From the IMG/VR virus record IMGVR_UViG_3300027708_000012, positions 281,370-345,369 of that record: a stretch of DNA of 64,000 nucleotides. One strand, given 5' to 3'. The position numbers and the translations under genes are program-made. The notes below the pieces were generated by a model, which was not told where the DNA came from, did not search any database, and saw nothing but the letters and a program-made list of their open reading frames with translations. Positions 1,708 to 44,742 of this stretch are shown one piece after another (position 1 is the stretch's first letter; every line of letters starts with the position of its first letter).

Positions 1708-1716
1708 TACTATTTT

Positions 1717-2080: not shown

Positions 2081-2092
2081 CATTTAACCCAA

Positions 2093-2296
2093 TTACTTGG
2101 GTTGAATATTTGCTGCCTGCAAGCCTTTTTGACCTTGTACCACATCAAATGTCACTGATTGATTCTCTTGCAGAACTTTGAATCCTGATGTTTGAATCGC
2201 TGAGTAGTGTGCGAAAAGATCCTCGCCGCCGCCGTCTGGAGTAATAAACCCAAAACCTTTGGTTTCATTAAACCATTTTACTTTACCTGTTGCCAT
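2093..2296 (-). CDS. cspA: Cold-shock domain protein
   Basis: [21 protein letters not shown]...DLFAHYSAI...GLQAANI; RNP1/RNP2 motifs. Confidence 0.95.
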
Positions 2297-3822: not shown

Positions 3823-4581
3823 TTATAGATTACTTGCGTATTTTGTTGCTGTTGGAGCACGTTTAGCGGCTTGTACTTTGGCATTAGCTGGTCTTTCAAA
3901 CTTGTGTGTCCATGCTCTACTGGCGGCATCTGCACTAGGGTACTCTCGTCCTATATATCTTGCACCGTCTGGCTCGGATAATGCAAAATCAATTTGTCCT
4001 TGCCAGTTATCTTTCCAACTTGGACCTAATTTTTGTTTTAATTGCGCAAATCGAGGACCGTTATGTTGAAATAATCCTCCACTAGGTAAGCCGTTAGAAT
4101 CAATAGTTTCAACTCCTGATCTAAAGCCAGACTCGTGTGCTATGTTAGCCATCATGCCTGCAATCTGTGTTATGCTCATATTCCATTTTTGTTTGCAATG
4201 ACGAGCGATATCCCGCCAAGGAACAGAACCTGCAACTTGTTTAATTTCAACTTTAGGTTTAGCTACTGGCGGCGCCTTTGCTGTTTGTACTGGTGGCAAG
4301 GATTTAGGCTTGGCCGCTGGTGTAGCAACTGCTGTTGCTTTGGCTTTTGCAATATCTGCAGGACCAGTCATTCTTGTGTCAACGCCCGGAGGGCCAAATG
4401 GTGCTCTGCTAGGTATAGATTTTGGATCTAGTTTACCTGATCCTATTTTAGCAATATCGTCTTCTGCTTCTAGTGCATCAGCAAACTGTTGAGCTGGCGA
4501 ATTAGTTTTTGGTGCTAGGCCTTTAGCTTGTAACAGATTGTCTAAATCGTCTTCTTTAATAGTAAATTCGTTTGCTCTCAT
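3823..4581 (-). CDS. Phage tail lysozyme (Phage_lysozyme2-like) domain protein
   Basis: AGMMANIAHESG...GLFQHNGPR...QIDF...FERPA. Confidence 0.8.
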   Translation of the reverse strand: MRANEFTIKEDDLDNLLQAKGLAPKTNSPAQQFADALEAEDDIAKIGSGKLDPKSIPSRAPFGPPGVDTRMTGPADIAKAKATAVATPAAKPKSLPPVQTAKAPPVAKPKVEIKQVAGSVPWRDIARHCKQKWNMSITQIAGMMANIAHESGFRSGVETIDSNGLPSGGLFQHNGPRFAQLKQKLGPSWKDNWQGQIDFALSEPDGARYIGREYPSADAASRAWTHKFERPANAKVQAAKRAPTATKYASNL

Positions 4582-12934: not shown

Positions 12935-13536
12935 TTTTTATTGTATAGTAAACTGGATGCCACTATCATAACAGTCTGTGCCATCTCAATATCTGAAGGT
13001 TTTTCCTTCCATCCGACACTAATTTGCCCGATAAACAAACCTGGTTCTGCTGGAACACTTATGCGACACATGTAGTTTACACCAGATGCTTTATAAGTAA
13101 ATCCAATATAGCTTTGAGGTCTGTTATAGTCTGCACAGGGAATTTTGCCTGACATTAGACCAATAACATCTTCATTGTTATTTAGATTTTTCGTTAACAG
13201 GCCAACATCTGCACCGTCGTGAGTTTTATCATGGCCGCCACTACGACTGGTTAAGTAAGTTAATTTTCTAGTGTTAAGCACAGTATTAACTTCAAACAAT
13301 GCTACTAGTTCTGCATCTGTATTTTTCAGTATAAAGTTTGCGGCTTCTTCATACTTGCCATTCATTTTGGGTAGTGCTTGTTGAGCACGATAACTGGCCA
13401 TAAAGTTATCTTTTTCGCTGTATACGATCCAGCCTCCAAAAGTAAGGAGGCATAGAAACACAACCGTAAATAGGCGAAAAGGACTTTCGCCTATGAACTT
13501 CAATAGTTCAAGCAGGAACTCTTTCAGCTTGTCCAT
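12931..13536 (-). CDS. Single-TM protein with periplasmic GAF-like domain (T4 holin T-like)
   Basis: N-terminal TM, two Cys, YMCRISVP...FIGQISVGW resembles holin T C-terminal domain. Confidence 0.5.
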   Translation of the reverse strand: MDKLKEFLLELLKFIGESPFRLFTVVFLCLLTFGGWIVYSEKDNFMASYRAQQALPKMNGKYEEAANFILKNTDAELVALFEVNTVLNTRKLTYLTSRSGGHDKTHDGADVGLLTKNLNNNEDVIGLMSGKIPCADYNRPQSYIGFTYKASGVNYMCRISVPAEPGLFIGQISVGWKEKPSDIEMAQTVMIVASSLLYNKK

Positions 13537-14788
13537 GGTCCACGTCTGCTACAAATGCTGTTACACCCATATTACCAATAACATGGCTGGCTGTGCGAAT
13601 CATATCCATTAGAGGATCAACAGCAATAAACAAGACCAATACTGCTTCGCTTGGTAGTTTTAACAAGTCACAAACAACTGCCACTGTAGCCACTGTTAGA
13701 ATACCTGTAGTACCTGCACTTGCTAGTCCTGCTAAAATGCTACCAAGCAATATAACAATCAATCCACTGGCACCTAATGATAAATCATAAATGCCAGCAA
13801 TAAACGCTGTGGCAATGGCATAGTAAACAATACTTCCAATACGGTTAACAGTAAAGCTCAAGGGAGTAGTTAGTTCTACGGCATCTTTATTATAGCCTAG
13901 TTTAACTAAAGCTTCTTGGCTGTAAGGAATACAAGCTAGGCTTGAACGACTACTAACAGCAATCATAAATGTTTCTTGTATGCCATGCATTGTGTCTATA
14001 ATACTCTTGCGAGATTTCCAGGCAATATATGCTGTAGCAATAGCAACAATAATAAATCCGCCCACAGTCTGCTGAATAATAAAATCAACCATAGTACCAA
14101 AAATGCCTACGCCTACCTTGGCTACTTGTGTTGATATCATGGCAAATAGTGCAATTGGTAAGAAGTAGTTTAAGAACTTGAAAATACTAATACTGGCCTG
14201 TTGGACACTTTTGAAGATATCAATCATAACTTCTTGTCCCACAGACTTTATGTTGCCCAGGGCAATACCGAAGATTAAACAGAAAATAACAATCTTAAGA
14301 CTTTCACCAGATTCTAAACTTTGAAAGATATTTTCTGGAATAAACTTCTGTATCATTGCACCAGCACTTGGCTTAGGTACAACTAGCATTGGCTCTTTTA
14401 GTGTAATTGACATTTCGGTCCCTTGGTCTTTGTTGTTGACCAATGCACCAAGTTGTACTTTCTTTTCGGGAGTCATTTCGCTGCCAGTTAATACTGTCGA
14501 ACCAACGCCAACGACAGAAGCCATGAACATACTAACAACAAAGCCAATGACAATCTTTTTAATCATCGACTGGCTACCTTCTTTCTGTAGCAGTCCAACT
14601 ACACCAACTAGAATAGTGGCAAATAAGAAAGGTAATACAACAACCTTTAATAAACTGATGTAGATACTACCAATAGATTCTAATGCCATAACTTCGTGAG
14701 GCAAATATACCCCGCCAGCTACAGCCAACAGAATACTGCCTAAAATAGTCCAAGGACTAGCTAAAAATTTCTTTATATCGATTTTCAT
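13508..14788 (-). CDS. Dicarboxylate/amino acid:cation symporter (DAACS/GltP family)
   Basis: About 9 TM; IPENIF, SSRSSLA, AVDPLMDMIRTASHVIGN motifs. Confidence 0.9.
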   Translation of the reverse strand: MKIDIKKFLASPWTILGSILLAVAGGVYLPHEVMALESIGSIYISLLKVVVLPFLFATILVGVVGLLQKEGSQSMIKKIVIGFVVSMFMASVVGVGSTVLTGSEMTPEKKVQLGALVNNKDQGTEMSITLKEPMLVVPKPSAGAMIQKFIPENIFQSLESGESLKIVIFCLIFGIALGNIKSVGQEVMIDIFKSVQQASISIFKFLNYFLPIALFAMISTQVAKVGVGIFGTMVDFIIQQTVGGFIIVAIATAYIAWKSRKSIIDTMHGIQETFMIAVSSRSSLACIPYSQEALVKLGYNKDAVELTTPLSFTVNRIGSIVYYAIATAFIAGIYDLSLGASGLIVILLGSILAGLASAGTTGILTVATVAVVCDLLKLPSEAVLVLFIAVDPLMDMIRTASHVIGNMGVTAFVADVDHGQAERVPA

Positions 14789-19647: not shown

Positions 19648-21555
19648 TTACTTTTTGTCAGTAGGGTCAACCTCTGTGAAAGCCGCATTAACTGACTGGC
19701 CTTCTTCAGGTTGTACTGGTGCTGATTGCGCTGCACTTTCTGCAGCTTGCTTCTTGGCCATAACTGGACCTGCTGCCTCAAAAAATGTTTCAACTGATTT
19801 TTGAATAACATCTTTGTCGTCCCCTGCGCAAGCAGTTTCTACTGCTTTAACAGCATCGTCAAACTTAGTCTTTTCTTCTTCAGTCAATTGATCTTTGTAT
19901 GTATCATAGTCTTTCTTGATACTGTGTGTAGTACCTTCAGCATTGTTACGTGCTGTGATTAATTCTGCTTGTTTCTTATCTGCTTCGGCATTTTCCTCAG
20001 CTTCTTGAACCATGCGTTTGATCTCAGCTTCTGTCAATCCGCTATCTGACTTGATAGTGATTTTGTTTTCTTTGCCGGTCTTTTTATCCCTGGCACTTAC
20101 ATTTAAAATACCGTTTGCATCGATATCTAATGTAACTTCAATCTGTGGCATGCCACGTGGTGCAGGATCAATACCTTCCAAGTTAAACTCGCCAAGCGAT
20201 TTATTGTACTTGAATAAGTCACGTTCGCCCTGAGCAACCTTAATAGTTACTGCTGGCTGATTGTCATCTGCTGTACTAAATGTTTGGCTATGTTTGGTCG
20301 GGATAGTTGTGTTTTTAGCAATCAGCTTGGTAAACACACCGCCCATTGTTTCAATACCTAGTGTCAATGGAGTAACGTCCAACAACAATACGTCTGTCTT
20401 GTCGCCAGCTAGAACAGCGCCTTGTACTGCGGCACCAGCGGCAACTGCTTCGTCTGGGTTAACGTCTTTACGTGGAGCCTTACCAAACAGTTTCTCAACT
20501 GCTTCTTGTACTTTAGGCATACGTGTTTGACCACCAACTAGAATAACTTCGTCGATGTCTGCGGCGCTAACTTTAGCATCTGCCATAGCAACTTTACATG
20601 GCTCAATTGAACGCTGGATCAGTCCGTCTACCATTGCTTCAAACTTAGCACGGCTGATAGTTACATTCATGTGCTTAGGACCGTTTGCATCTGCTGTAAT
20701 GTAAGGCAAGTTAACACTTGTACTTGCGGCTGTAGATAATTCAATCTTGGCTTTTTCAGCAGACTCTTTCAAACGTTGTAATGCAAGAACGTCTTGCTTC
20801 AAATCAACTCCGTTGTCTTTCTTGAACTCGTCTACCAAATAGTCCATGATAGCTTGGTCAAAGTCTTCACCGCCTAGGAATGTATCGCCGTTTGTTGACA
20901 ATACTTCAATTTGCTTGTCGCCATCAATGTTAGCGATTTCAATGATTGAAATATCAAATGTACCACCACCCAAGTCATAGACTGCAATCTTGCGATCTTT
21001 CTTGTCTGCTTTGTCAACACCATAAGCCAATGCGGCCGCTGTCGGCTCGTTGATAATACGTAGAACTTCTAAGCCTGCAATACGTCCGGCATCTTTAGTA
21101 GCTTGACGCTGGCTATCGTTGAAGTAAGCTGGAACTGTAATAACAGCTTGGGTCACTGTTGTACCTAAATAGTCTTCAGCAGTTTTTTTCATTTTGCGAA
21201 GTACTTCAGCTGATACTTGCTGTGGTGCAAGTTTTTCGCCGTTTGCTTCGATCCAAGCATCACCGTTGTCTGCTTTAATAATGCTGTAGGGCATCAAGTC
21301 AATATCTTTTTGCACAGCAGCTTCGTCAAACTTGCGACCAATAAGGCGCTTGCTGGCGTAAATTGTATTTTTTGGGTTTGTGACTGCTTGTCGTTTTGCT
21401 GTTGCACCAACTAGGATTTCGTCCTTTGTATATGCAATGATTGATGGTGTTGTTCTTGCGCCTTCGCTATTTTCAATAACTTTTGCTACTCCATTTTCTA
21501 GGATAGCTACGCAACTGTTTGTTGTACCTAAATCGATACCGATGATTTTACTCAT
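19648..21555 (-). CDS. dnaK: Chaperone DnaK (Hsp70)
   Basis: [35 protein letters not shown]; full length 635 aa. Confidence 0.98.
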
Positions 21556-22800: not shown

Positions 22801-23203
22801 TATCGTTTTCCTCGTCTTCGTCTTGGTTCTCCAATTGTTCAACAATCAAATCAAGATTATAAATTCGATTTTTACTAATTAGACCGTATGGAGTTATTTC
22901 GTCGCTAGTTATGTAGCTTGCATTAGGTTGGGCAATAATAAAAGTAACAAATTTTTGTGTAATGCTGTCACAGTTATCCACATCTACTATTACACAATCT
23001 GCTTGTTGGCATATACTTAAAAGCCAACCAATATCATTATCATCAGTGTCATAGATAAAAACATTTAAATCATCGATGCTTTTACTTAAAATTGTTTGAA
23101 ATTGTTCTTTAACTGATGTACTAGGTTTAATTAGTAGATAACTCAAGTTCATATTAAACAGTTTATCAGGAGGCGTTATTAATGTTATTTTTCCTAAGTT
23201 CAT
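22781..23203 (-). CDS. Hypothetical phage protein
   Basis: [13 protein letters not shown]...; acidic tail; overlaps neighbours. Confidence 0.75.
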
Positions 23204-23513
23204 ATATCTTTTCTGCAAAATAGTCTAGTTCTTCCGTGGGGTAATCGTTAAATTTCGTAGTACCAGTTTTTATATCATTTATAAACTTAACTAACTCGGG
23301 TTCTGTTTTAGAATCAAATATTAAATTGTTAAATTTATTTTCACTATATTCTATATACAATCTGTCTATTGTTTTAAATGGATCTGTGCGACTAGTATTT
23401 TTTATACGTTGCCAAAAACTTTTTGGATCTTTTTGCTCTTCGTTCTGAACATATGTTATTCTTTGTTCTTCACTTGGATTTTCCCCGTTTGATCCTTGAT
23501 CATATATGTCTTT
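23166..23513 (-). other. -1 frame extension of 23456..24604 reached via slippery site (115 codons)
   Basis: Open -1 frame KDIYDQGS...YVQNEEQ...FWQRIK...LYIEYSENKF...NNAS* starting at A_AAA_AAG. Confidence 0.65.
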
Positions 23514-24604
23514 TTTTTTGATTCTTCTTCGACTTTTGTTTCTTCGCCGTTACTATTAATATATGTTTCACCAACAGCTAAACGTTCTTCAATTGTAGAC
23601 TCTTCTAGTTTAACTTCTTCAACTACGATTGGTGTTTGATCTAATTCACTAATTACAACTGTTGAATCTGCCGTTGTAGTATTATTTGGTACTTCAAATT
23701 CTGGACCAGTTTGTATCCACTCACCACCAGGTTCTCGGACACCTTCAAAGTCTGTTTTAGTTTCTTTAGATTCCTCTACTACAATTGGAGCATTGAAAGC
23801 TTCAGTTAATTCATCTGCTTGATCATCAATCCATGTTTTTTCTTTTTGTTCTCTAGCCCAACCAAATGTCATTTGTGCGGCCAATAGCATGATAACTGCC
23901 AGCGGATCAAAGACAACAACAATTAAAATGATGATCCAAGTTACAGCACGTTCGAGCATCGACTCGTCTGGTGCTCGATCGTAGATAAATGCCGCGATAT
24001 ACTTAATTGGGCCAACTTCGGCTTCGACCTTGCGTACTTCTGCACGTATTGGGGCCGCTTCGTCGTTAAGACTTGCAATAAGTTTCTGTTGGGCTTCAAT
24101 ATCTTTGGCAAGCGCAATGCGGTCTTTCTGTTGACTCTTACGTACAGCGTTGGCTTTGTCCGCACCTTTTTCATCTGTTGAGCGACCCATAATTTGGTCC
24201 ACCGCTTCATCCATCTGTTTAAGTTGCTTCCTGTCAGCTTCGATATTCTCTTTGGCTGTTTTGATTTTCTCATCATATATCGCTATCTTACTTCCAACAT
24301 CACCACTTACTAGTGTTTGATCATTGTGTGCTTTAGAGAGGAATCCGAAGATACCCATTGATGTAATTAACATTAACACAACTACAGCAATGGTCATGTA
24401 ATACTTCATGAAACGTGGAACACGTTCCCAATTTGCTTTTAACCAAGAGGCACAAACAAGTTTACCTACTTCCAGGGCAGAGCCCATGATAATAATCGGA
24501 ATAGCGGCAGCAGAAAAAATAGCGGTGAGACCTACTACGGAATAGTAAATCGCCACCGCTGAGATTGTTAATCCTGTAAGCAGAAGCAAATAAGCTAATA
24601 TCAT
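23456..24604 (-). CDS. Membrane protein with coiled coil (4 TM) and acidic tail
   Basis: LEVGKLV, TSMGIFGFLSKAH, VEAEVGPIKYIA, VFDPLAVIMLLAAQ. Confidence 0.85.
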   Translation of the reverse strand: MILAYLLLLTGLTISAVAIYYSVVGLTAIFSAAAIPIIIMGSALEVGKLVCASWLKANWERVPRFMKYYMTIAVVVLMLITSMGIFGFLSKAHNDQTLVSGDVGSKIAIYDEKIKTAKENIEADRKQLKQMDEAVDQIMGRSTDEKGADKANAVRKSQQKDRIALAKDIEAQQKLIASLNDEAAPIRAEVRKVEAEVGPIKYIAAFIYDRAPDESMLERAVTWIIILIVVVFDPLAVIMLLAAQMTFGWAREQKEKTWIDDQADELTEAFNAPIVVEESKETKTDFEGVREPGGEWIQTGPEFEVPNNTTTADSTVVISELDQTPIVVEEVKLEESTIEERLAVGETYINSNGEETKVEEESKKKTYMIKDQTGKIQVKNKE

Positions 24605-26808: not shown

Positions 26809-27135
26809 TTATACTCGAAAACTTTCACCGCAACCGCAACGGTCACGTTCATTTGGATTGATAAAATCAAATCCTTCATTGAGTCCATTGCGGACCCAGT
26901 CCATTGTTAGTCCGTTTAAGTAGACAAATGACTTTTCATCTACTAATACTACAAAATCATTTTGAGCAAAGTTGATTACTCCAACTTCATGTTCGTAGCT
27001 GTCTACATATTCTAGAACATATGCTAATCCGCTACATCCAGTGGTTCTAACACCTATGCGTATTCCAACGCCTTTACCACGACGTTCTAAAGTTTGTTTA
27101 ATTTTTTTACTTGCCGTGTTGGTTATATTAATCAT
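26809..27135 (-). CDS. iscA: Fe-S cluster assembly A-type carrier
   Basis: TTGCSGLAY; F.FINPNERDRCGCGESF. Confidence 0.95.
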   Translation of the reverse strand: MINITNTASKKIKQTLERRGKGVGIRIGVRTTGCSGLAYVLEYVDSYEHEVGVINFAQNDFVVLVDEKSFVYLNGLTMDWVRNGLNEGFDFINPNERDRCGCGESFRV

Positions 27136-28273
27136 TTATTAAATTATTTAATCTTGGATATAAATCTAAGTTTCCTAAATTTAATTTTAAATTCCAATAT
27201 TCCCACATTGCATATTGAATTTCAAATGCAGGGACACTTGGATCAATAATTTTTAATAACTCTCTAAACTTAGGATCTTCTGCTTTTGATAATATATGAT
27301 TGTATGCCGATAGTCTAGCATGTTTCCAAAATGCAGTATTATATTTGTTTGAACTAAAATAATGCAATAAAATTATTGTTTCAATTTCTGAAACTAGTTG
27401 GAGGAAATAATTATTAACCGCCTCAACCGGGACATTATTATTCCATTGATCATAGGCAAGTTGCTGAACTTTAGTAGAAAGCCATAATGGAGTAGTTTCC
27501 ATAGGTTCTAAAAACATACTTGCACTACCATTGTATACTATTCGTTTAGTAAAATTTTCTTTACGAAAGTAATTTTTCCAAGAAAATGTGCCAGTGTTCT
27601 CGCTAGGTATTAATTGGTATTCTTCAAAGACATTAACAACATCGTCTTTGATGTCATCGACATTATTAATATCTGTATTATATACATACCCAACAGCACA
27701 CCTGTTTTGCAACGGTACACAAAACACCCACCCGTATGGTCTAGCAATAGTCAGTGTTTCATTAAACTTAGGGTAATCCCAGTAACACTGAGTTATATAA
27801 GCGCCGTTTACTGGGATTGAACTAGTAGTCGAATAATCATCAAAATTTGTTGGCCTGCCTGAACAATCAATTACAAAGTCAGAATCTATATCTTCATTTG
27901 CAATATTTTTATCAATAAGTTTTATTCTTGGATTAGTCGATGCATAGTTAACTATATATTCTTGTAGTTTAACAGCATTAAAATGATATCCTACAGCAGG
28001 TGGTGCAAAATAATTTAAAATAGGTTTTTCTGAAAACCCAATTTTTTTAACACCTGTTTTAAAAGTACCATCTATTAAATGCAAATCACTATGTGTAAAT
28101 CCAAATAAATCGTGAAGCTGTTGTGTAAATCCAACAAAGCCGCCTTCACCTACTGGTTGCGGCTTTATATTGCTGTCAAAGTACCAGTCTATTTCCCAAT
28201 CGGTGTATTTTAGAAAATGTCCCACATTCATGCAACCTGCGGTGCCTTTTCCAACTATGGCTAATTTTTTCAT
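27128..28273 (-). CDS. Flavin-dependent tryptophan-halogenase-like protein
   Basis: GKGTAG, VGEG, TFKTGV, IDCSG, GWVFCVPLQNR, FLEPME motifs. Confidence 0.8.
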   Translation of the reverse strand: MKKLAIVGKGTAGCMNVGHFLKYTDWEIDWYFDSNIKPQPVGEGGFVGFTQQLHDLFGFTHSDLHLIDGTFKTGVKKIGFSEKPILNYFAPPAVGYHFNAVKLQEYIVNYASTNPRIKLIDKNIANEDIDSDFVIDCSGRPTNFDDYSTTSSIPVNGAYITQCYWDYPKFNETLTIARPYGWVFCVPLQNRCAVGYVYNTDINNVDDIKDDVVNVFEEYQLIPSENTGTFSWKNYFRKENFTKRIVYNGSASMFLEPMETTPLWLSTKVQQLAYDQWNNNVPVEAVNNYFLQLVSEIETIILLHYFSSNKYNTAFWKHARLSAYNHILSKAEDPKFRELLKIIDPSVPAFEIQYAMWEYWNLKLNLGNLDLYPRLNNLIND

Positions 28274-28655: not shown

Positions 28656-30290
28656 TTAACCTTTTGTTATTAATTTATTTACCTCGGGGAGATAAAGGTA
28701 TTTAATTCCTGATCTCCTCAAAGTGCTTAATGCATCATCAATTGTTTCTACTAAGGGTTCTCCTCCTAAATTAAAACTAGTATTAAATAAAATTGGAACA
28801 CCAGTTTGATTATTAAACTCAGTTATCAAATTATAAAAATGAAAATTTTGTTCAATATTAATTGTTTGTACTCGACACGTATTATCCACATGTACAATGC
28901 TTGGTATTTGATTTTTCTTATTTTCTAAAACATTCACAGCATACATCATAAATGGACTGTTAGACGTGTTACGCATATCAAACCATTCGTGTACATGCTC
29001 TTCTAATACAGTTCCGGCAAACGGCCTGTACCATTCTCTTCCTTTTACACGATTAACAATGTCTTTACCTTGTTGTACTCTAGGGTCGAACAAAATACTA
29101 CGATTGCCTAATGCACGAGGTCCAGCTTCTGAACCTCCTTGAAATATAGCTACTATATTTTCAGAAACTAATAGATTAACAATGTCCGAGTAACTAACTG
29201 TTTGCTCAGTTTCATTTGATTCTAATTTATAATTGTAACTAGGAGTTGGACCTAGACAAAAAGATAATTGTTTATTTGGAGTCGTATTATTAGTAGTACT
29301 ATAATAAGCCAGTTTAGCTATACCTATACTTTGCCCCCCATCGTGCGCAGGAGGGTCTATGAATACATTAACGTCTTTAGGAATGTGTTTTAAATATTCA
29401 TAATTAGCTACACAATTTAATGCATAGCCGCCTGATATTACTAAATTTTTAGAATTGGATAATTTAAGTGCGGTTAAAATTAAATCAGTGGCTACTGATT
29501 GAGTAGATTGCTGTACAGCATAACAAAGATTGGCCGCATCATATTGTTCTACTTCGTCAAGGAATGGCGCAGCATACATTGCTGTATTAGGCCTAAACAA
29601 CTGTTTGTTAGGTGTTTTTTTACCGTTAACAGTTACATATATTTGTGGAATAGTTTCATCGTTCTTTCCGTACGAACTTAATCCCATTGCCTTGCCGCAC
29701 TCTAAATTTGTATGCCCTAAAGCAATACTTAGTGCAGAGTATATACTGGCAATACCTTGCTCATTAGCAAAGACTTTTTCTTCGTGAAACTTAGTAAGTT
29801 GATTATAGTTATTTCCAAACTTTTTATATATAGATGTAAATGTTTTTGGAAATTTTGCTAGATATATGCTTTCAACTTCGTATCCGGCTTTGCCAGCTTG
29901 GTCTAATTCGATATATTTTCCAGCAGCATCTATAACTACACATACCGCTTGGTCAAAACCAGAACTATAAAATCCACTGGTTGCATGATATAGATGATGC
30001 TCACCATTATTAAACACTTGCCTGTGATTGTCAATTAATCCAAGTTTTAAGGCAAATTTAATAAACGGGCCTGCTTCATTTGTAGTATCTGATGACCCTA
30101 CAGATATGGCTAGACAATCTACTTTATTCGTGTATTCAAGAACTTTAAGTAGTCCTAAGAATGGACTATCGTCGTATTTTTTTCGACTTAGTCTTTCTTC
30201 TTCTACATAAAAAACAATATTACCATTTTTAAGTAAACAAGTAGATGCGTTATGCCCTGTACTTATACCTACAATCCAGTTGTCACGCAT
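28656..30290 (-). CDS. Carbamoyltransferase (NodU/CmcH/TobZ family)
   Basis: EEERLSRKK, HHLYHA, GPRALGNRSIL, KGREWYRPFA, NTSFNLGGEP. Confidence 0.92.
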   Translation of the reverse strand: MRDNWIVGISTGHNASTCLLKNGNIVFYVEEERLSRKKYDDSPFLGLLKVLEYTNKVDCLAISVGSSDTTNEAGPFIKFALKLGLIDNHRQVFNNGEHHLYHATSGFYSSGFDQAVCVVIDAAGKYIELDQAGKAGYEVESIYLAKFPKTFTSIYKKFGNNYNQLTKFHEEKVFANEQGIASIYSALSIALGHTNLECGKAMGLSSYGKNDETIPQIYVTVNGKKTPNKQLFRPNTAMYAAPFLDEVEQYDAANLCYAVQQSTQSVATDLILTALKLSNSKNLVISGGYALNCVANYEYLKHIPKDVNVFIDPPAHDGGQSIGIAKLAYYSTTNNTTPNKQLSFCLGPTPSYNYKLESNETEQTVSYSDIVNLLVSENIVAIFQGGSEAGPRALGNRSILFDPRVQQGKDIVNRVKGREWYRPFAGTVLEEHVHEWFDMRNTSNSPFMMYAVNVLENKKNQIPSIVHVDNTCRVQTINIEQNFHFYNLITEFNNQTGVPILFNTSFNLGGEPLVETIDDALSTLRRSGIKYLYLPEVNKLITKG

Positions 30291-31779: not shown

Positions 31780-32880
31780 TTATAGTGCCGGTAATGCATC
31801 ATAATCCAACGTTTCGCTCATAATGCCAATAACATAATTAGTTGATTCGTTTTCTTGTAATGCTGTTTGTTTTTTACTTGTATCAGTATGTTTATTAAAC
31901 CATGGGATTGGAGTTGACTTTGGTGCAATTTGTTGATATTTAATACCAATGTCCTTTAATGCACCCACTGCTGTATAGTCTACAAAGTCTTTTAAGATAT
32001 TGGCATTTAAACCAATAACAGGACCTTTCTTAAACAAATAGTCTGCCCATTCTTTTTCTTCACGAATAACGTCCATATACATAGAATAGACTTCTTGTTC
32101 GCACTCTTGTTTGGCTTCAGCAAATCTACTATCTTCCTTGACCACTTGATTAATCAAATAGGCGGTCCAACCTTTGTGTAATAGTTCGTCTTGCAAGATC
32201 AAACTAATAATATTGCCGTTACCCATAAAGATTTTATTCTCTACCATTGCTAGACTTGTAGCAAAGCTAACCATAAAACGGAAGGCTTCTAGTGCGTAAC
32301 TGGCATTTAGTGCTAACCAGATAGCTCTAATATGTAATTTTTCACCAACATCTTCACCAAGCTCTTTATGACAATTAATTACGTGCAATTGGTCATAATA
32401 ATTGCCTACACTTGAGGCCATACTGATAATCTCTTGTGTGTCGTGGATAGTGTTGAATACATCCTTAGGAACATTGTAGATATTACGAATGATATGGCTA
32501 TAACTCTTTGAGTGAATGTTTGTTTCAAAGAATCCCCAGTTGTACATTAGTGCTTCTACTTCTGGCAAACTACAGACTGGAGTAAACACTTGTGTAGGGC
32601 CGCGACCTTGCAAACTGTCCAGTGCTGTTTGTCGTAGCAAGTTACTGGTAAAGATATGTTTGACAGCATCGCTGGCATCTTTAAAATCGTTAGCATCTTT
32701 GGTCAAACTAATTTCTTCTGGTTGCCAAAAGAAACCACGTGCTGTAGCTTCAAAGTCTGCAATCTTTTTATACTTGACTTCCTCAAATCTTTGAATGGTA
32801 ACAGGACCTGCTGGGTCTAAGAACATCTTGCGATTAAGATAGTCTGTCTTTGTTTTTAAATTATATTGTTCTTTACTCAT
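31780..32880 (-). CDS. nrdB: Ribonucleotide reductase class Ia beta subunit
   Basis: FFWQPEEI, LDSLQGRGP, ETNIHSKSY, LEAFRF, DELLH. Confidence 0.95.
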   Translation of the reverse strand: MSKEQYNLKTKTDYLNRKMFLDPAGPVTIQRFEEVKYKKIADFEATARGFFWQPEEISLTKDANDFKDASDAVKHIFTSNLLRQTALDSLQGRGPTQVFTPVCSLPEVEALMYNWGFFETNIHSKSYSHIIRNIYNVPKDVFNTIHDTQEIISMASSVGNYYDQLHVINCHKELGEDVGEKLHIRAIWLALNASYALEAFRFMVSFATSLAMVENKIFMGNGNIISLILQDELLHKGWTAYLINQVVKEDSRFAEAKQECEQEVYSMYMDVIREEKEWADYLFKKGPVIGLNANILKDFVDYTAVGALKDIGIKYQQIAPKSTPIPWFNKHTDTSKKQTALQENESTNYVIGIMSETLDYDALPAL

Positions 32881-35198
32881 AGCTTACATGCCTCGCAATC
32901 TTCTTCGTTGTCAAAATCAATAGCTTCTAACATGGTAGGTGCTTCTTCGGCATCTGCTTTACTACCTTGTTTGTTAATCAAACTATAGTAGAATGTTTTC
33001 AATCCCCACACCTGTGCCTGCATTAAATTTTTAGCAATCAATGTAGTTGGCACTTTACGACCTTCAAAGTGCGCTGGGTTATAGAATGTATTAGTACTAA
33101 TTGATTGATCAACATAGGCGGCGAGAACAGAAGCTGTTTTCAAATACCCGTCGCAATCTTTCTGATCCCACATCAACTGATACTTATTTTTAAGTTTATG
33201 GTATTCAGGAACAACTTGTATAAATGATCCTGCTTTTGATTCTTTAACACTGATCAAACTCATGGGCAACTCAATTCCATTAGTGCTGTTTATAACAACA
33301 CTACTGCTTTCGACTGGGGCGATGGCCATTAGTGTAGCATTGCGTACTCCGTACTGTTTCATATTAGTACGTAGCGTTTCCCAATCAAGTTCTGGGGCAA
33401 AGTTTGCTAGTTCATTAACACCTTCTGCTCGTAATTCCCAAGGGAATATGCCTTGACCGTATCGTGTGTGTGAGCTATGCTGACAAGGACCACGCTCTCG
33501 GGCCAAATCAACTGTTGCTTCTGTCAAGTAATAGGCTTGATGCTCCATCCAACTCTTAACATCCTGTAGTGCATCTTTCTCACCATACTTAAATCCACGT
33601 TTGGCGTGCCAGTAGGCTAGATTAGTAACACCAATACCCAGTGGACTAATTTCGTCGTTACTTAATTTGCTCTGGATTGAAAGAAAATCTTGATAATCTA
33701 AAATATTGCACAGGCTACGCTGTAAGATACGGCAAGCTCGGCGCATGTCTTCTGGATTACGGAAGGCTCCCCAGTTGATTGATCCTAGTGTACATAACGC
33801 TATGCGGCCTTCAGCGTCATCCAGACGTTTGAAAGATTTTGTAGGTAATAGGATTTCACAACACAAATTGCTTTGGTAGATAGTGTGATACTCTGGGTCA
33901 AACGGACCCTGGTTCATTACATTGTCAATGAACACTAGATAGATACGTCCTGTATCAGTACGCTCTTTCAATATGCCCGACTTGAATACTTCTTCAGCGG
34001 ACATAGTTTTTGTACGCAGGTCTTTGCGTTTTTCATATTTTACATATAGCTCTTCAAATAGTGCTGTGTTACTATAAAAAGCTTCGTACAAGTCAGGTAC
34101 TTCGTTAGGATCAAAGAATGTTATAGTCTCTTTGTTCTTAAATCGTCTCCAGAAAAATTTAGATAACACAACTCCGTAGTCCATGTGTCTAACTCGAGTT
34201 TCCTCTGTGCCTTGGTTGTTTTTAAGAACAATAAGGTCATCAAACTGATGATGCCAGATTGGATAGAACACAGTAGCACTAGCATTACGAATACCACCTT
34301 GACTACAACTACGCAAGTCACCGAACCATTTCTTTAAGAAAGGGATCATACCAGTATGCATGATTTCGCCACCGCGAATTGGGGAGCCCAATGGGCGAAG
34401 TCGACCGATTTCCAATCCAATCCCCGCACGTTTACTGGCATACTTTGCCATCATTTCACCACTAGCAAATATACTATCGAGGTCATCATCGCTACGTATG
34501 AGAACACAAGAACTAAACTGCTTAGTAGGAGTGCCAAGTCCGGCCAGCACAGGAGTAGCAAGAGTAAACAAACCATCAGAAGCCGCATTGTAATACTCCT
34601 TTATATAACGCATCCTTGCGCTGTTTGGTTCTTCACGATGAAAGACAGTAGCGGCCGCAACCATATATCTAATCTGTGGAGTTTCATAAGTTTCTTTTGT
34701 AGCACGATTACGTACTAGATATTTTTCAATTAGTTGTTCAATAGCTGCGTAACTGTATTGCTCGTCCTTTTCGTGATCGAGCATTGCATCCATTTTGTTC
34801 CAGTCTTCTTCGCTATACCACTCTAGCAGTTCTTTAGAGTACAGACCAATTTTAACATTTTTTTGTACAATAGAAAAAAGGCTTGGAGGTTTGTATGAAC
34901 CGTAAACATCTTTACGCAACATTGACAAACGCTGTTTACCTGCAACATATTGATAGTTTGTATGTCCAATATCAGGATTTGATTCTACGTCTATCAAATC
35001 AACAACAGCACGTAATGTAATCTCGTCAATTTCTTTTGTTGTGATACCATCGTAAAAGTGCGGCTGACTTTTGATCTCAATCATACTCTGACTGACGTCA
35101 GCTATTCCCTTGCATACTTTGGCAATTTGAGCTTGCCATTTTTCTACAGCTAGCAACTCTGTAGTTCCATTTCTTTTTATTACCGTTATGTTGTTCAT
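32877..35198 (-). CDS. nrdA: Ribonucleotide reductase class Ia alpha subunit
   Basis: ATP cone, QFSSCVLI, SNLCCEI, LCTLG, C-terminal CEACKL. Confidence 0.97.
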   Translation of the reverse strand: MNNITVIKRNGTTELLAVEKWQAQIAKVCKGIADVSQSMIEIKSQPHFYDGITTKEIDEITLRAVVDLIDVESNPDIGHTNYQYVAGKQRLSMLRKDVYGSYKPPSLFSIVQKNVKIGLYSKELLEWYSEEDWNKMDAMLDHEKDEQYSYAAIEQLIEKYLVRNRATKETYETPQIRYMVAAATVFHREEPNSARMRYIKEYYNAASDGLFTLATPVLAGLGTPTKQFSSCVLIRSDDDLDSIFASGEMMAKYASKRAGIGLEIGRLRPLGSPIRGGEIMHTGMIPFLKKWFGDLRSCSQGGIRNASATVFYPIWHHQFDDLIVLKNNQGTEETRVRHMDYGVVLSKFFWRRFKNKETITFFDPNEVPDLYEAFYSNTALFEELYVKYEKRKDLRTKTMSAEEVFKSGILKERTDTGRIYLVFIDNVMNQGPFDPEYHTIYQSNLCCEILLPTKSFKRLDDAEGRIALCTLGSINWGAFRNPEDMRRACRILQRSLCNILDYQDFLSIQSKLSNDEISPLGIGVTNLAYWHAKRGFKYGEKDALQDVKSWMEHQAYYLTEATVDLARERGPCQHSSHTRYGQGIFPWELRAEGVNELANFAPELDWETLRTNMKQYGVRNATLMAIAPVESSSVVINSTNGIELPMSLISVKESKAGSFIQVVPEYHKLKNKYQLMWDQKDCDGYLKTASVLAAYVDQSISTNTFYNPAHFEGRKVPTTLIAKNLMQAQVWGLKTFYYSLINKQGSKADAEEAPTMLEAIDFDNEEDCEACKL

Positions 35199-37907: not shown

Positions 37908-38261
37908 TTATTTGAGTTTATCAGAAACAGCGTTCATTGCTGACTGATGAATTTTATTTGGTTTAGGTTTGCCTTGCTCGGGTTCGAGTTCTTCGCCTTT
38001 GGTGTTAATAACAACACCCTGGCCGTCAAAACGAGCAACTAGTTTTTTAATAACAGGATCACTTTCCCAACGTGCGGCAAATCTATCATAATCGATATCT
38101 GGTGCGCCGTAGTTTTGTCCTGCTTGATTAAGTGCGTCCCAAGTCATAGGAGCGTCGATATGAGAATCACTGTCTGCACCTTGGTTGTTGGCGCTAGATT
38201 GTAGAGCCCTTAATGTTAAAATTAAGGGGTCTACGCTTTCTCTAATAGATTGAATTACTTT
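37908..38261 (-). other. -1 frame extension of 38255..39235 reached via slippery site (117 codons); includes ORF 37908..38147
   Basis: Open frame KVIQSIRESVDPLILTLRAL...APMTWDALN...DKLK* beginning at A_AAA_AAG. Confidence 0.65.
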
Positions 38262-39235
38262 TTTTTTGAGTTGAGTAGCATGCCTAGTCGACGACTGTAG
38301 TCAACACTTTCACGCTTTTCGCGGCCTGATACGCCTTCAGGGCCTGCGCCCATGTCAGCTTCGGGAGGCACTTCTGGACCTGCACCCATTGGTGCACCGC
38401 CTGCTGGAGATGCGCCAGGTAATGCTGGACCTGCACCCATTGCAGGTGCTTCTCCGCCTGAAATTAATGCCAATGCGCCTGATAAACCACCGCGGCTTGT
38501 TTCTAATGCCGCATAGATTGCTTCAAGAGCTGGCTTTACTTGTTCGGTATATTGTTGAGCAACATCGCTGCCCATTGCTTCTCTTATAGAGTCTGTTAAT
38601 TCTAAAAGCTGTTCTGCTTTCATGGCCGCTACATCTTCTAGCCAACCAGTAACACGGTCAACCATATCTTTAGTTGCCATGATAACTTCAGCTTTGTCTT
38701 CTTCGCCTTCTGCTAGATATACAATATAATTTGCTGCGTTTTCTGATAAATCATAACGTAATGTTAATTCAGCTGATAATTCTTCTTCGTCGCTTTCGCC
38801 TAATTCTACTCGCTTGATTGCGCTGTTGATCCAACTTTCTGGAACGCTGTGTTCCATGGCCTTTTCTTTTATTTTTTCAGCCTTTAGCTTTTTACGCATT
38901 TCAGCTTTTTGCTCTGCCTTTTCGTCAACGCTTTCTTCCATGCATTCGCAAGGATCTTTGTGGCAATCGCTGCACTTGCCTTCTTCACGTTCCATGATTT
39001 CTGTATTGATACAGTCTAGCATTACGCGAGTCTTTTGATAGTCAGGGCTTTCATTGATGCTATCATAGCTTTCGCTAACTTCAAACTGGCTTAACTTTGT
39101 GCGAAGTTTGTTACGTGCATCTTCTAATTGCACATCGCTAAATTGTTCTAGATTAAGTTTGTAGCCAAATTGCTTTGCTAAACTTTCGTTTAGTTTTTTA
39201 GCTGTCACTGGCTTTGATAATTCTCTTAGTTGCAT
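38255..39235 (-). CDS. Acidic coiled-coil protein, probable prohead core/scaffold
   Basis: Helical, Glu-rich, several (L/I)xE sites; ends NSKKK*. Confidence 0.7.
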   Translation of the reverse strand: MQLRELSKPVTAKKLNESLAKQFGYKLNLEQFSDVQLEDARNKLRTKLSQFEVSESYDSINESPDYQKTRVMLDCINTEIMEREEGKCSDCHKDPCECMEESVDEKAEQKAEMRKKLKAEKIKEKAMEHSVPESWINSAIKRVELGESDEEELSAELTLRYDLSENAANYIVYLAEGEEDKAEVIMATKDMVDRVTGWLEDVAAMKAEQLLELTDSIREAMGSDVAQQYTEQVKPALEAIYAALETSRGGLSGALALISGGEAPAMGAGPALPGASPAGGAPMGAGPEVPPEADMGAGPEGVSGREKRESVDYSRRLGMLLNSKKK

Positions 39236-43197: not shown

Positions 43198-44742
43198 TTA
43201 AGCCCCTGAGTATCCGCCGTGGTATGGATTGTACAAATACTTGTTAGGCGCACCTAATAGTGCTGTACTATTGCTCCATGCATTAGTACTATTATTTGGA
43301 TTATACACTTGACTAGTTTTAGCCTGTGTTGTAATCCAAGTTTTAACTTGTGTAGGTGTTGCTGTGGGGTTGCCTTGCAAGTATAAAGCAGCTACGCCAG
43401 TAACTTGCGGAGTTGCCATACTAGTACCGGCAATTTTGCAAGCCTTGAATGTTGTTTGTTGTTGTGTGCCAAACACATACTGGAATGGACTAAAACTACT
43501 TTGATTGCTAGTACTACTTGTAATGTCAGTGCCTGGACTGATAATATTGCAACCTGGACCGCGCTCGCTGTAGTAGGCCAGTTGCTCTAAGTAACTACTT
43601 CCATTTTTAACAGTTGCACTATCGCTAGCACTTACACGGATTGTACCACTAGGACTTCCGCCTCTATGATAATATATAGGAGTGTTGGCTGGAGCAATAG
43701 CACCTGAAAAACTATGTGTATAATAGTTGTTGTAATCTGCGCCACCACTCACATCAATTTTATGACCATAGTTGCCAGCTGCTGCTATGTAGACAATACC
43801 AGCTGTTTGACCTTGAGCAATGCGTGTTTCAGTTGCTGGATCGCTAATGCAATGTTCAAACCCTACCATTCCTTTGCTGGGCAAATACTGTGTACCGCTA
43901 GCGTAATTGGTAGTTGTGCCTTCATAAACAATCTTATTGATAGTTTTTTGATTTGGACGATTTGCATTATCGCTGTAATACCAAACATATCCCCAACTCA
44001 TGTTAACAATAGTTGGACGATGATTGCCTGTGGCTATTTTTCTTAAATGCCAAGCACGGAGAATATCAAATGCTGCATAAGTATCAAAACTCTTAGTACC
44101 ACCTGGTGAATTGTCAAATATGCGCAGACTATAGATGTAAGCACCTTTTGCGGCACCGTAGGTTGTGCCAGCGGCTATGCCAGCCACATGTGTACCATGT
44201 TCGCCTTCACCGTAATTGCTGTAATCATAGTAACCAACTGGCATAGTGCCCGATAGTCCAGCTTCTGTGTACCAATTGATTTCTTTTAGTCTTGAACCAA
44301 ACTCTGGATGTCCTGATTGCACACCATCATCCATGATAACAATGTCAACACCAGTACCGTCACGAGAGGCTGCATAAGTTGTGCCCACTGTGCTTTCAGT
44401 AGTGTTAAGTGTTGCTCGGCGCAAGCCCCAATTTACATTATACAAGTCTGGATTAGTAGCACGACGGGAAAAATTGCCAGCTGTGTTATTATAAGCACGG
44501 GGAGTTTCTGTTACATCTGATACAGTATGTGGACGAGCAGCACTGGCAGGTAATTTATAGTGTATGTGTGCCACACGAGGATCAGTTGCTAGTTTGGCAG
44601 CTTCCTCGTCGGTCAACATGTAATGGTAAGTAAGTTCGTTTAAAGGAACTAGATCTGCAATTTCAGTGCCATTGGCCACTAGTTCAGCATGCAAACTATC
44701 TATATCTGCTTCGCTATGTGCGACAATGACACATTCTTTCAT
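43198..44742 (-). CDS. Subtilisin-like S8 serine protease
   Basis: IMDDG, HGTHVAG, AAAGN, GTSMATPQV; N-terminal propeptide-like region. Confidence 0.92.
   Translation of the reverse strand: MKECVIVAHSEADIDSLHAELVANGTEIADLVPLNELTYHYMLTDEEAAKLATDPRVAHIHYKLPASAARPHTVSDVTETPRAYNNTAGNFSRRATNPDLYNVNWGLRRATLNTTESTVGTTYAASRDGTGVDIVIMDDGVQSGHPEFGSRLKEINWYTEAGLSGTMPVGYYDYSNYGEGEHGTHVAGIAAGTTYGAAKGAYIYSLRIFDNSPGGTKSFDTYAAFDILRAWHLRKIATGNHRPTIVNMSWGYVWYYSDNANRPNQKTINKIVYEGTTTNYASGTQYLPSKGMVGFEHCISDPATETRIAQGQTAGIVYIAAAGNYGHKIDVSGGADYNNYYTHSFSGAIAPANTPIYYHRGGSPSGTIRVSASDSATVKNGSSYLEQLAYYSERGPGCNIISPGTDITSSTSNQSSFSPFQYVFGTQQQTTFKACKIAGTSMATPQVTGVAALYLQGNPTATPTQVKTWITTQAKTSQVYNPNNSTNAWSNSTALLGAPNKYLYNPYHGGYSGA

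What the first reader, a model, noticed from the sequence alone, without database searches (positions are those of the whole stretch)
37908..38269. Programmed -1 frameshift candidate 2: identical TCAAAAAAAAAG at the end of the putative head core gene
Seen: the 326-aa gene ends TCA AAA AAA AAG TAA (38269-38255). The -1 frame has a stop 12 codons upstream and no start, then runs KVIQSIRESVDP... in frame into ORF 37908..38147. The same 12-mer in the same phase occurs at 23521, making two independent recoding sites with one signal. Inference: a genome-wide recoding device producing C-terminally extended minor isoforms (about 442 aa here), possibly tuned by tRNA-Lys status or phage ribosome factors.
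Basis: partly seen in the sequence, partly recalled or inferred. Interest (0 to 1): 0.85.

Follow-up and report, generated by a model that had tools for sequence, protein, structure and literature searches.

The report
Conserved A9 frame-shift site in jumbo phage
A run of nine A's at the very end of a phage gene is kept unchanged in more than a hundred related uncultured freshwater jumbo-phage contigs and lets part of the expression run on in the -1 frame, joining two proteins that more distant phages encode as separate genes; it is a real, conserved recoding site of a known general kind, and it is still open whether the RNA polymerase or the ribosome slips.

Summary
On the minus strand the 326-aa gene ends TCA AAA AAA AAG TAA (38269-38255). 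The -1 frame then stays open for 117 codons with no start codon before ATG 38147.

It is not a sequencing error. All 80 related IMG/VR loci (58-100% protein identity) carry C-A9-[G/A/C]-TAA at the same place. The synonymous sites inside the run never vary, while neighbouring codons vary freely.

The -1 frame shows a protein-coding substitution pattern from its first codon. The window's ATG is Met in only 18 of 54 unique sequences. In outgroup phages the same two genes are separate, with a normal stop next to or overlapping an ATG.

The second site (23521-23510, a membrane protein) is conserved in the same way. One sub-clade carries A10 there, with the two reading frames swapped.

Best reading: a programmed frame change at the A-run yields a 442-aa A-B fusion beside the 326-aa product. 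RNA-polymerase slippage (one extra A) is the more likely mechanism. Ribosomal -1 slippage on the embedded A_AAA_AAG is the close rival.

"Head core" and tRNA-Lys tuning have no support, and "genome-wide" rests on two sites. This is a new member of a known kind.

The parts
38255..39235 (-). Gene A: 326-aa acidic protein of unknown function, the 0-frame product ending ...LLNSKKK*. Its outgroup orthologue carries DUF3008.
   Evidence: ORF list. More than 3685 homologues; the top 120 are 289-343 aa and 119 of them end SKKK or SKKN. Weak match to phrog_14154 'virion structural protein'. 48% identity over the C-terminal 155 aa to the 460-aa DUF3008 protein of L248.
38258..38269 (-). Slip cassette TCA AAA AAA AAG. 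The A9 run is at 38259-38267, with the heptamer A_AAA_AAG in 0-frame phase.
   Evidence: Present in 80/80 loci as [T/C]C-A9-[G/A/C]. Lys codons are AAA 50/50 and 50/50 and the preceding codon is NCA 50/50, whereas an upstream conserved Lys is AAA 28 / AAG 20.
38255..38257 (-). 0-frame stop TAA directly after the cassette.
   Evidence: TAA in 80/80 loci.
37908..38261 (-). -1-frame extension (gene B): K-VIQSIRESVDPLILTLRALQ...SDKLK*, 117 codons plus stop. It has no start codon of its own in most relatives.
   Evidence: Open for 101-123 codons in all 51 unique versions. Substitutions by codon position are 0.44/0.35/0.57 in the stretch upstream of the window's ATG, and the other two frames carry 5-16 stops. 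The AlphaFold model places helix 12-27 upstream of the ATG.
38145..38147 (-). ATG that a gene caller would use for the 79-aa ORF. It is not a conserved start.
   Evidence: The column is Met in 18 of 54 unique sequences (Leu 22, others 14). 22 of 54 have no ATG at all between the run and the conserved Trp.
38207..38228 (-). Possible hairpin CCCTTAAT / ATTAAGGG with a 6-nt loop, 29 nt after the cassette here and 17 nt after it in most relatives. Its role is unknown, and it lies too far away to be a classical frameshift stimulator.
   Evidence: 81.8% of cells paired against 74.3% in shuffles; 22 double-change cells against 7.1. RNAalifold did not predict it. The structure was picked by eye from these sequences.
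23510..23521 (-). Second slip cassette TCA AAA AAA AAG, inside the 382-aa membrane-protein gene.
   Evidence: A8-A10 run at the homologous place in 71 of the 80 loci (A9 in 67, A8 after TCT in 3, A10 in L155); 47 of 50 unique segments carry A9 and 3 carry A8.
23456..24604 (-). Site-1 gene: 382-aa protein with N-terminal transmembrane helices. The 0-frame tail TYMIKDQTGKIQVKNKE* follows the cassette.
   Evidence: ORF list. Tail length is 16-18 codons in all loci. Variability by codon position in the tail is 0.18/0.19/0.32 in the 0 frame, which is a coding pattern.
23166..23513 (-). Site-1 -1-frame extension: K-DIYDQGSN...YVQNEEQ...[11 protein letters not shown].
   Evidence: Open for 103-115 codons in most lineages and 38-43 in seven. 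Conserved YVQN.EQ...W and a C-terminal domain, with no conserved start. Encoded in frame in the A10 sub-clade.

Best explanation
The A9 run at the end of gene A is a programmed frame-change site. Standard expression gives the 326-aa protein, which stops at TAA. In a fraction of expression events, reading continues in the -1 frame and gives a 442-aa protein, gene A joined to the roughly 116-aa gene-B domain.

In more distant phages, A and B are two adjacent genes, each with its own stop and start. In this clade B has lost its start and can only be made as the fusion.

The same C-A9-G cassette does the same job in an unrelated membrane-protein gene at 23521-23510. There, both the short 0-frame tail and the long -1 extension are conserved.

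I think the most likely mechanism is slippage of the RNA polymerase on the nine T's of the template. This adds one A to some mRNAs (A10), and those mRNAs are then translated normally into the fusion. Ribosomal -1 slippage on the embedded A_AAA_AAG may contribute or may be the real cause.

Shown: conservation of the run, coding selection in both frames, absence of a conserved start, and the outgroup and swapped-frame arrangements. Inferred: that the fusion is made, in what proportion, and at which step the slip occurs. My confidence that this is programmed recoding giving a fusion is about 0.9. The figure below is for the transcriptional mechanism specifically.
For: - Conservation: 80/80 loci at 58-100% identity end C-A9-N-TAA. 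The same holds for every locus that reaches the site in a second sampling, and three metagenome contigs all have A9.
- Synonymous sites in the run never vary. Both Lys codons are AAA 50/50 and the preceding codon is NCA 50/50. In the same alignment a conserved upstream Lys is AAA 28 / AAG 20, and Ser, Leu and Arg codons vary freely. Three of the nine A's lie outside the X_XXY_YYZ heptamer, so it is the run length that is selected.
- The base after the run varies (G 43, C 4, A 3). [quoted passage not shown]
- RNAalifold finds no conserved structure, and I saw no shared upstream purine-rich (SD-like) motif, at either site. No Rfam frameshift element matches. The two sites share only YC-A9-G.
- The -1 frame is coding from its first codon (position variability 0.44/0.35/0.57). 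The ATG is not conserved, and 22 of 54 unique sequences have no ATG before the conserved Trp. The predicted fold includes a helix upstream of the ATG.
- The outgroups L247 and L248 keep the gene order but have ...TAA t ATG or an ATGA overlap and no A-run.
- At site 1, four contigs of one sub-clade carry A10, with the long form in the 0 frame and the conserved 20-codon short tail in the +1 frame. A -1 ribosomal shift there would meet TGA at once. The sister lineage has A9 with the usual frames. So the frame relation follows run length, as expected if mRNAs with varying numbers of A are made. C. rodentium tssM1 and Y. pseudotuberculosis tssM3 are a known pair of this kind (PMC4256274).
- Nine is the run length at which selection against slippage appears in many bacteria, and it is the length used by Thermus dnaX and by IS elements (PMC1088944). 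Single-base insertions in A/T runs rise exponentially with run length (PMC5574713).
Against: - No RNA or protein data were available, so neither the fusion nor any A10 mRNA has been seen.
- The heptamer A_AAA_AAG is in the right phase at both sites and in most lineages, which polymerase slippage does not need (chance of the same phase at two sites is about 1/3).
- Several site-1 lineages have only A8 (TCT AAA AAA AAG) but keep the heptamer.
- The TAA directly after AAG at site 2 is invariant. It could serve as a slow A-site codon that promotes -1 slippage of the P-site tRNA.
- The host and the polymerase that transcribes these genes are unknown.
- Two other in-phase A_AAA_AAG heptamers sit in mid-gene in the window (42822 and 8745). 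This argues only that the heptamer alone is tolerated.
- The pyrimidine-C before the run is conserved at both sites, and neither mechanism explains it.
Confidence: 0.55

Rival explanations
1. Programmed -1 ribosomal frameshifting. With AAA in the P site and AAG in the A site, the tRNA-Lys pair slips back one base on A_AAA_AAG, as in E. coli dnaX and IS elements. Alternatively, the P-site tRNA on AAG slips while the TAA stop waits in the A site. Either route gives the same 442-aa fusion from unaltered mRNA.
For: The heptamer is in 0-frame phase at both sites. Z is G in 43 of 50 sequences at site 2 and always G at site 1. The A8 lineages keep the heptamer. TAA follows the heptamer in 80/80 loci at site 2. 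A_AAA_AAG is the most shift-prone heptamer in E. coli (PMC5009743).
Against: The three A's outside the heptamer are frozen at synonymous sites. Lineages with A_AAA_AAC and A_AAA_AAA persist. There is no conserved downstream structure at 5-9 nt and no upstream SD-like motif at either site; the only candidate hairpin lies 17-29 nt away. In the A10 sub-clade a -1 shift gives an immediate TGA, yet the short tail, now in the +1 frame, stays conserved. The permuted tmRNA matches the betaproteobacterial family, which hints at a betaproteobacterial host. From my own recollection, not checked here, many betaproteobacteria also carry a tRNA-Lys(CUU), which would weaken slippage on AAG.
Confidence: 0.33
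2. There is no recoding. Gene B is translated on its own, from the ATG at 38147 or by re-initiation after termination at TAA, and the A-run is merely an A-rich, unstructured ribosome landing site.
For: In the outgroups the two genes are separate, and the stop next to or overlapping the ATG suggests translational coupling. Gene callers do call short ORFs there.
Against: The ATG column is Met in 18 of 54 unique sequences, and 22 of 54 have no ATG before the conserved Trp. The first -1 codons after the run are GTA, ATA or CTA, followed by ATT, AAT, ACT or AGT, so there is no conserved initiator. Coding conservation and a predicted helix start directly after the run. Site 1 uses the same cassette 17 codons before the 0-frame stop, where re-initiation cannot apply, and an in-frame sub-clade proves that its extension is part of the same polypeptide.
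Confidence: 0.04
3. The site is an artefact or a change at the DNA level: a homopolymer miscall (true A10), a pseudogene, or phase variation by replication slippage that gives A9 and A10 sub-populations of phage.
For: Long A-runs are prone to sequencing and replication slippage. An A10 form exists at site 1 in one sub-clade.
Against: More than 100 independently assembled contigs from many samples give the same run length and frame relation across 58-100% identity, including variants with A10-TAA or A8 that keep the same frames. Both frames are under purifying selection. The A10 sub-clade has an extra T as well and a conserved alternative frame, so it is a fixed rearrangement and not a miscall. 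Minor A10 sub-populations in the DNA cannot be excluded from consensus assemblies.
Confidence: 0.03

Closest known systems
Transcriptional slippage on A9/T9 runs: Thermus thermophilus dnaX, IS-element orfA-orfB fusions, Shigella mxiE (PMC1088944, PMC5009743)
   Same: A run of nine A's in the sense strand with no other signal. Insertion of one A joins two overlapping ORFs into a longer product (mxiE, IS elements). Two products share one N-terminus. The run is conserved among homologues.
   Different: Here it sits in a dsDNA jumbo phage, in genes of unknown function, at the last codons of the upstream gene. It replaces an ancestral junction where gene A's stop lies next to or overlaps gene B's ATG. 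mRNA heterogeneity has not been shown here.
tssM1 of Citrobacter rodentium (A11) and tssM3 of Yersinia pseudotuberculosis (PMC4256274)
   Same: A poly-A tract just before a stop. Polymerase slippage gives a long and a short form, both needed in a set ratio. In one homologue slippage makes the long form and in the other the short form, which parallels the A9 and A10 lineages at site 1.
   Different: The run there is 11 A's, the genes are bacterial, and the mechanism was shown by mass spectrometry of RT-PCR products. Here everything is inferred from sequence comparison.
E. coli dnaX and IS3-family -1 ribosomal frameshifting on A_AAA_AAG (PMC5009743)
   Same: The same heptamer in the same phase, and lysine tRNA slippage would give the same protein.
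   Different: dnaX and IS sites have an upstream SD-like element and a downstream stem-loop or pseudoknot at 5-9 nt; none is conserved here. Here the A's beyond the heptamer are also fixed.
Phage structural-gene frameshifts: lambda G/GT tail chaperone, T7 gene 10A/10B
   Same: The logic is the same: a minor C-terminally extended isoform made at a fixed ratio from the end of a phage gene.
   Different: The genes are not homologous and not in a tail-chaperone position (the neighbours are an exonuclease, a fibre-like protein and ribonucleotide reductase). The slippery sequence differs, and a virion role is not established here.

Membership tests
Programmed transcriptional slippage site (A9/T9 type) | Homopolymeric A or T run of about the RNA:DNA hybrid length (9 or more) in the sense strand | tested here: met
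   A9 at 38259-38267 and at 23511-23519. These are the only runs longer than 7 in the window.
Programmed transcriptional slippage site (A9/T9 type) | Run length kept by selection at synonymous positions among homologues | tested here: met
   AAA 50/50 and 50/50, NCA 50/50, against AAA 28 / AAG 20 at a control Lys. 93 of 95 unique A9 contexts in 1.26 Mb of related loci are these two sites. Exception: A8 in a few site-1 lineages.
Programmed transcriptional slippage site (A9/T9 type) | The new frame after the run encodes a conserved protein that has no start of its own | tested here: met
   site 2; site 1.
Programmed transcriptional slippage site (A9/T9 type) | Outcome depends on run length modulo 3, not on codon phase or the flanking base | tested here: inconclusive
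   Z varies G/A/C. The A10 sub-clade has swapped frames, with both tails conserved. But both sites share one phase, and G dominates.
Programmed transcriptional slippage site (A9/T9 type) | mRNA population with extra A's in the run | not testable with these tools
   No RNA reads were available. The one metagenome scan found only A9 in three DNA contigs.
-1 programmed ribosomal frameshift (dnaX / IS type) | X_XXY_YYZ heptamer in 0-frame phase | tested here: met
   At site 2, A_AAA_AAG in 43 of 50 sequences, A_AAA_AAC in 4 and A_AAA_AAA in 3. A_AAA_AAG at site 1.
-1 programmed ribosomal frameshift (dnaX / IS type) | Downstream stimulatory stem-loop or pseudoknot 5-9 nt after the heptamer | tested here: not met
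   RNAalifold found no consensus pairs at either site. The only candidate hairpin starts 17-29 nt downstream, at site 2 only.
-1 programmed ribosomal frameshift (dnaX / IS type) | Upstream SD-like stimulator 10-14 nt before the shift site | tested here: not met
   Upstream sequence is not conserved at site 1. At site 2 it encodes LGMLLN with varied codons. No shared purine-rich motif is visible in the alignments.
-1 programmed ribosomal frameshift (dnaX / IS type) | Trans-frame protein made from unedited mRNA | not testable with these tools
   This needs proteomics together with RNA sequencing.
Phage tail assembly chaperone G/GT frameshift | Gene pair lies between the major tail protein and the tape measure gene; the proteins are chaperone homologues | tested here: not met
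   The neighbours are a PD-(D/E)XK exonuclease, an Mtd_N/pectate-lyase fibre-like protein and RNR. There are no Pfam or PHROG chaperone hits.
Prohead core / scaffold protein ('head core gene') | Homology to a known head core or scaffold family, or a position in a head-gene module | tested here: inconclusive
   The only hit is phrog_14154 'virion structural protein', at E 8e-8 over residues 168-254 and E 6e-14 for the outgroup orthologue. The window protein has no Pfam hit, and the outgroup orthologue has DUF3008. A subtilase gene lies 5 kb away.

The most novel reading that the evidence does not exclude
A large clade of freshwater jumbo phages uses RNA-polymerase slippage on a short portable cassette (YC-A9-G) as a general way to make two isoforms from one gene. 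The cassette has been installed independently in at least two unrelated genes. In one it replaced an ancestral junction where gene A's stop adjoins gene B's ATG, and in the other it flipped between 'long form by slippage' (A9) and 'short form by slippage' (A10). As far as I could find, that would be the first conserved, programmed transcriptional slippage system described in tailed dsDNA phages. It would also be a natural series for measuring how run length sets isoform ratios.
Probability: 0.45. Interest if true: 0.7.

Novelty: new member of a known kind. Interest (0 to 1): 0.55.

Why it matters
- Annotation. The gene family is large: more than 3685 homologues of gene A in public metagenomes, on contigs up to 387 kb. 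Gene callers currently split it into a 326-aa protein plus a short ORF with an arbitrary start. The roughly 442-aa fusion, and the roughly 480-aa fusion at the second site, are missing from annotation.
- Evolution. The comparative series shows recoding sites being born and remodelled. It runs from separate genes in the outgroups, through the A9 fusion-by-slippage, to the in-frame A10 lineage and the A8 lineages.
- Mechanism. The series offers a clean test between polymerase and ribosome slippage using existing lake metatranscriptomes.
- Novelty. If the polymerase is responsible, this extends programmed transcriptional slippage to tailed phages. It is so far known from bacterial IS elements, dnaX, secretion-system genes and RNA viruses.

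Tried and rejected
- Known relatives in GenBank phages. Megablast of the region, and tblastn of gene A and of the extension, found nothing. Only the site-1 protein has distant homologues, all hypothetical proteins, in Pelagibacter phage Mosig, XacN1, RsoM2USA and SCTP-2.
- Function. Pfam, PHROGs, an AlphaFold model and Foldseek gave no convincing assignment for gene A or for either extension. The weak winged-helix-like matches (E above 0.5) are not evidence.
- RNA stimulators. RNAalifold found nothing up- or downstream of either site. Rfam has no matching element.
- In-frame A-B fusions at site 2. None is among the 120 best homologues or among the 94 cluster representatives of the extension. 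The few long proteins that carry the domain have it at their N-terminus.
- Run-length variation in DNA. The single metagenome scan (A8 plus 0-3 bases) returned only three contigs, all A9. That is too few to say anything about minor variants.
- A phage RNA polymerase or tRNA-Lys in the window. None was found.
- Read-through of TAA or an alternative genetic code. Rejected: the 0 frame carries 5-14 further stops, and stop usage is ordinary (TAA 52, TGA 11, TAG 2).
Full report
**1. The observation**

On the minus strand the 326-aa ORF 38255..39235 ends CTA CTC AAC TCA AAA AAA AAG TAA. In the -1 frame the last stop lies 14 codons before the Val codon. There is no ATG, GTG or TTG until ATG 38147, and the frame is open for 117 codons down to 37908.

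The 12-mer TCAAAAAAAAAG occurs twice in the window, at 38258-38269 and 23510-23521, both on the minus strand. Shuffles predict 0.04 occurrences. These are the only homopolymer runs longer than 7 in 64 kb: A5 143, A6 41, A7 13, A8 0, A9 2 on the coding strand.

At the second site the phase is the same. The 0 frame continues for 17 codons and the -1 frame for about 115.

**2. It is not an error, and it is conserved**

The window belongs to a 345-kb uncultured viral contig (IMGVR_UViG_3300027708_000012). Eighty IMG/VR loci encode homologues of the 326-aa protein at 58-100% identity. Every one ends [T/C]C-A9-[G/A/C]-TAA. A second sampling from a distant member gave the same result for every locus that reaches the site.

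In a 50-sequence alignment the two Lys codons in the run are AAA in 50/50 each, and the preceding codon is TCA (48) or CCA (2). A conserved Lys a few codons upstream is AAA 28 / AAG 20. Conserved Ser, Leu, Arg, Tyr and Asp codons vary freely at the third position. So the nucleotides of the whole run are under selection, beyond what the protein needs.

In 1.26 Mb of related loci the unique A-run contexts number A6 709, A7 152, A8 23, A9 95 and A10 5. Of the 95 A9 contexts, 93 are these two sites.

The protein database holds more than 3685 homologues. The 120 best are 289-343 aa, and 119 of them end SKKK or SKKN.

**3. The -1 frame is a real coding sequence without its own start**

- All 51 unique -1 extensions are open for 101-123 codons. 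They align from the first codon after the run: [V/I/L]-x-x-E-x-x-DPL-x-x-L-x-x-Q....
- Pairwise differences by codon position are 0.44/0.35/0.57 in the stretch upstream of the window's ATG and 0.42/0.32/0.59 downstream of it. The other two frames carry 5-16 stops.
- The window's ATG column is Met in only 18 of 54 unique sequences. 22 of 54 have no ATG at all before the conserved Trp.
- An AlphaFold model built on 60 sequences (mean pLDDT 70, about 85 in the core) puts a helix at residues 12-27, upstream of that Met.

**4. Where the site came from**

Distant homologues of the extension domain begin with their own Met (MKLFEVD..NLVLLLRNL...).

In two outgroup contigs the gene order is the same as in the window: gene A, gene B, PD-(D/E)XK exonuclease, pectate-lyase-like fibre. 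But gene A ends with an ordinary stop next to the ATG of gene B...GGA CGA TAA T ATG in L248, and an ATGA overlap in L247. There is no A-run.

Gene A of L248 (460 aa, DUF3008) is 48% identical to the window protein over the C-terminal 155 residues, E 2e-38.

So in this clade a junction of two adjacent, probably translationally coupled genes was replaced by the A9 cassette, and gene B can now only be made as a fusion.

**5. The second site**

Seventy-one of the 80 loci found with the 382-aa membrane protein carry an A8-A10 run at the homologous place. Sixty-seven have YC-A9-G, three have TCT AAA AAA AAG (A8), and one (L155) has A10. Among 50 unique segments 47 carry A9 and 3 carry A8.

The 0-frame tail (16-18 codons, TYMIKD..G.IQ.K.R) shows a coding pattern: variability by codon position is 0.18/0.19/0.32. 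The same bases read in the -1 frame do not (0.30/0.18/0.19). After the 0-frame stop, the -1 frame carries strongly conserved motifs (YVQN.EQ...W, then a C-terminal domain) with no start. Both isoforms are therefore conserved.

One sub-clade is the most informative. Four contigs (57-65% identical to one another, one from a 299,582-bp contig) have GACC-A10-TGAC. There the long form is in the 0 frame, and the 20-codon short tail (KKKMTYIVKQ.D.QVKK.RQ*) is conserved in the +1 frame. A -1 shift meets TGA at once. The sister lineage has CCC-A9-GAA with the usual frames.

This proves that the extension belongs to the same polypeptide. It also shows that the frame relation follows the run length.

**6. 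Mechanism**

Two mechanisms would give the identical protein.

*(a) RNA-polymerase slippage that adds one A.* The evidence in favour:
- The full nine A's are fixed, including three outside the X_XXY_YYZ heptamer.
- Neither site has a conserved stimulatory structure, and the alignments show no shared upstream SD-like motif. The two sites share nothing but YC-A9-G.
- The A10 sub-clade needs a shift in the other direction to make its conserved short tail. That is natural if mRNAs with varying numbers of A are made, as in Thermus dnaX (PMC1088944). The tssM1/tssM3 pair is a parallel (PMC4256274).
- Nine is the length at which selection against slippage appears in many bacteria, and it is the length used by IS elements (PMC1088944).
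- Single-A insertions rise exponentially with run length (PMC5574713).

*(b) Ribosomal -1 slippage on A_AAA_AAG.* The evidence in favour:
- The heptamer is in phase at both sites.
- G dominates after the run.
- The A8 lineages keep the heptamer.
- TAA directly after AAG is invariant at site 2.

I put (a) at about 0.55 and (b) at about 0.33; they may act together. Independent initiation of gene B and artefact or phase variation are each below 0.05 (sections 2-5).

**7. What the proteins are**

Unknown.
- Gene A has only a weak PHROG match to 'virion structural protein', so 'head core' is not established.
- The extension has no significant sequence or fold relatives. The only structural resemblance is weak and winged-helix-like, with E above 0.5.
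- The site-1 protein has N-terminal transmembrane helices. Its distant homologues are hypothetical proteins in Pelagibacter phage Mosig and several jumbo phages.

**8. Comparison and verdict**

The site works like the A9/T9 slippage sites of IS elements, mxiE, dnaX (Thermus) and tssM. It also resembles dnaX/IS-type -1 frameshift sites, but without their stimulators. It is not a tail-chaperone G/GT pair.

I found no paper describing this family, or programmed polymerase slippage in tailed phages. One Campylobacter phage paper only suggests that slippage might rescue a frameshifted methyltransferase gene (PMC2853527).

It is a well-supported new member of a known kind. It comes with an unusually rich natural series of variants, and the question of polymerase versus ribosome can be settled with existing lake metatranscriptomes.

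Noticed in passing
window 1686-2128 (-): The phage encodes a permuted (two-piece) tmRNA. Rfam gives tmRNA_permuted 125.9 bits and beta_tmRNA 106 bits. ARAGORN reads the tag peptide as AKTSTFEYFQVPVTLASANDAEFALAA. The match to the betaproteobacterial family hints at a betaproteobacterial host.
   Followed up: partly
L252-L255 (site-1 homologues), e.g. L252:1673-1682: A sub-clade has A10 instead of A9, with the reading frames swapped. The long form is in frame, the conserved short tail is in the +1 frame, and the -1 frame stops at TGA at once.
   Followed up: yes
window 38207-38228 (-): A possible conserved hairpin (CCCTTAAT / ATTAAGGG) lies inside the DPL..TLR codons, 17-29 nt after the cassette. 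It uses the unusual codons CCC and AGG and shows some covariation (A-T to G-C at one pair). Its role is unknown.
   Followed up: partly
both cassettes: window 38268-38269 and 23520-23521 (-), and all related loci: The two bases before the run are pyrimidine-C (TCA or CCA) at both unrelated sites in nearly all lineages. Neither slippage model explains this.
   Followed up: no
L150 and L151, position 4385-4393: A lineage-specific extra A9 (ACA AAA AAA AAT) lies in frame inside the site-1 extension and is not conserved elsewhere. If A9 alone causes slippage, this lineage should also make truncated products.
   Followed up: no
L090, L093, L097, L120, L122, L146, L157 (site 1): In seven lineages the -1 extension ends after 38-43 codons, just after YVQN.EQ...W. 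They lack the C-terminal domain found in the others, so that domain seems to be a separable module.
   Followed up: no
P0174 (463 aa), P0192 (771 aa), P0196 (336 aa), P0177 (261 aa): In distant phages the gene-B domain is the N-terminus of much longer proteins with their own Met, so the domain is fused to different partners in different lineages.
   Followed up: partly
window 19648-21555 (-): A phage-encoded DnaK (Hsp70) homologue, 52-70% identical to the best-matching DnaK sequences in the phage collection.
   Followed up: partly
window 13508-14788, 27128-28273, 28656-30290, 31780-35198, 43198-44742 (all -): Auxiliary or unusual genes: a sodium:dicarboxylate symporter, a tryptophan-halogenase-like protein, a Nol-like carbamoyltransferase, both subunits of ribonucleotide reductase, and a subtilase-family protease.
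   Followed up: no
window 42822 and 8745 (-): Two further in-phase A_AAA_AAG heptamers lie in the middle of ordinary genes, with short -1 frames (1 and 13 codons). The heptamer alone is therefore tolerated in this genome.
   Followed up: partly
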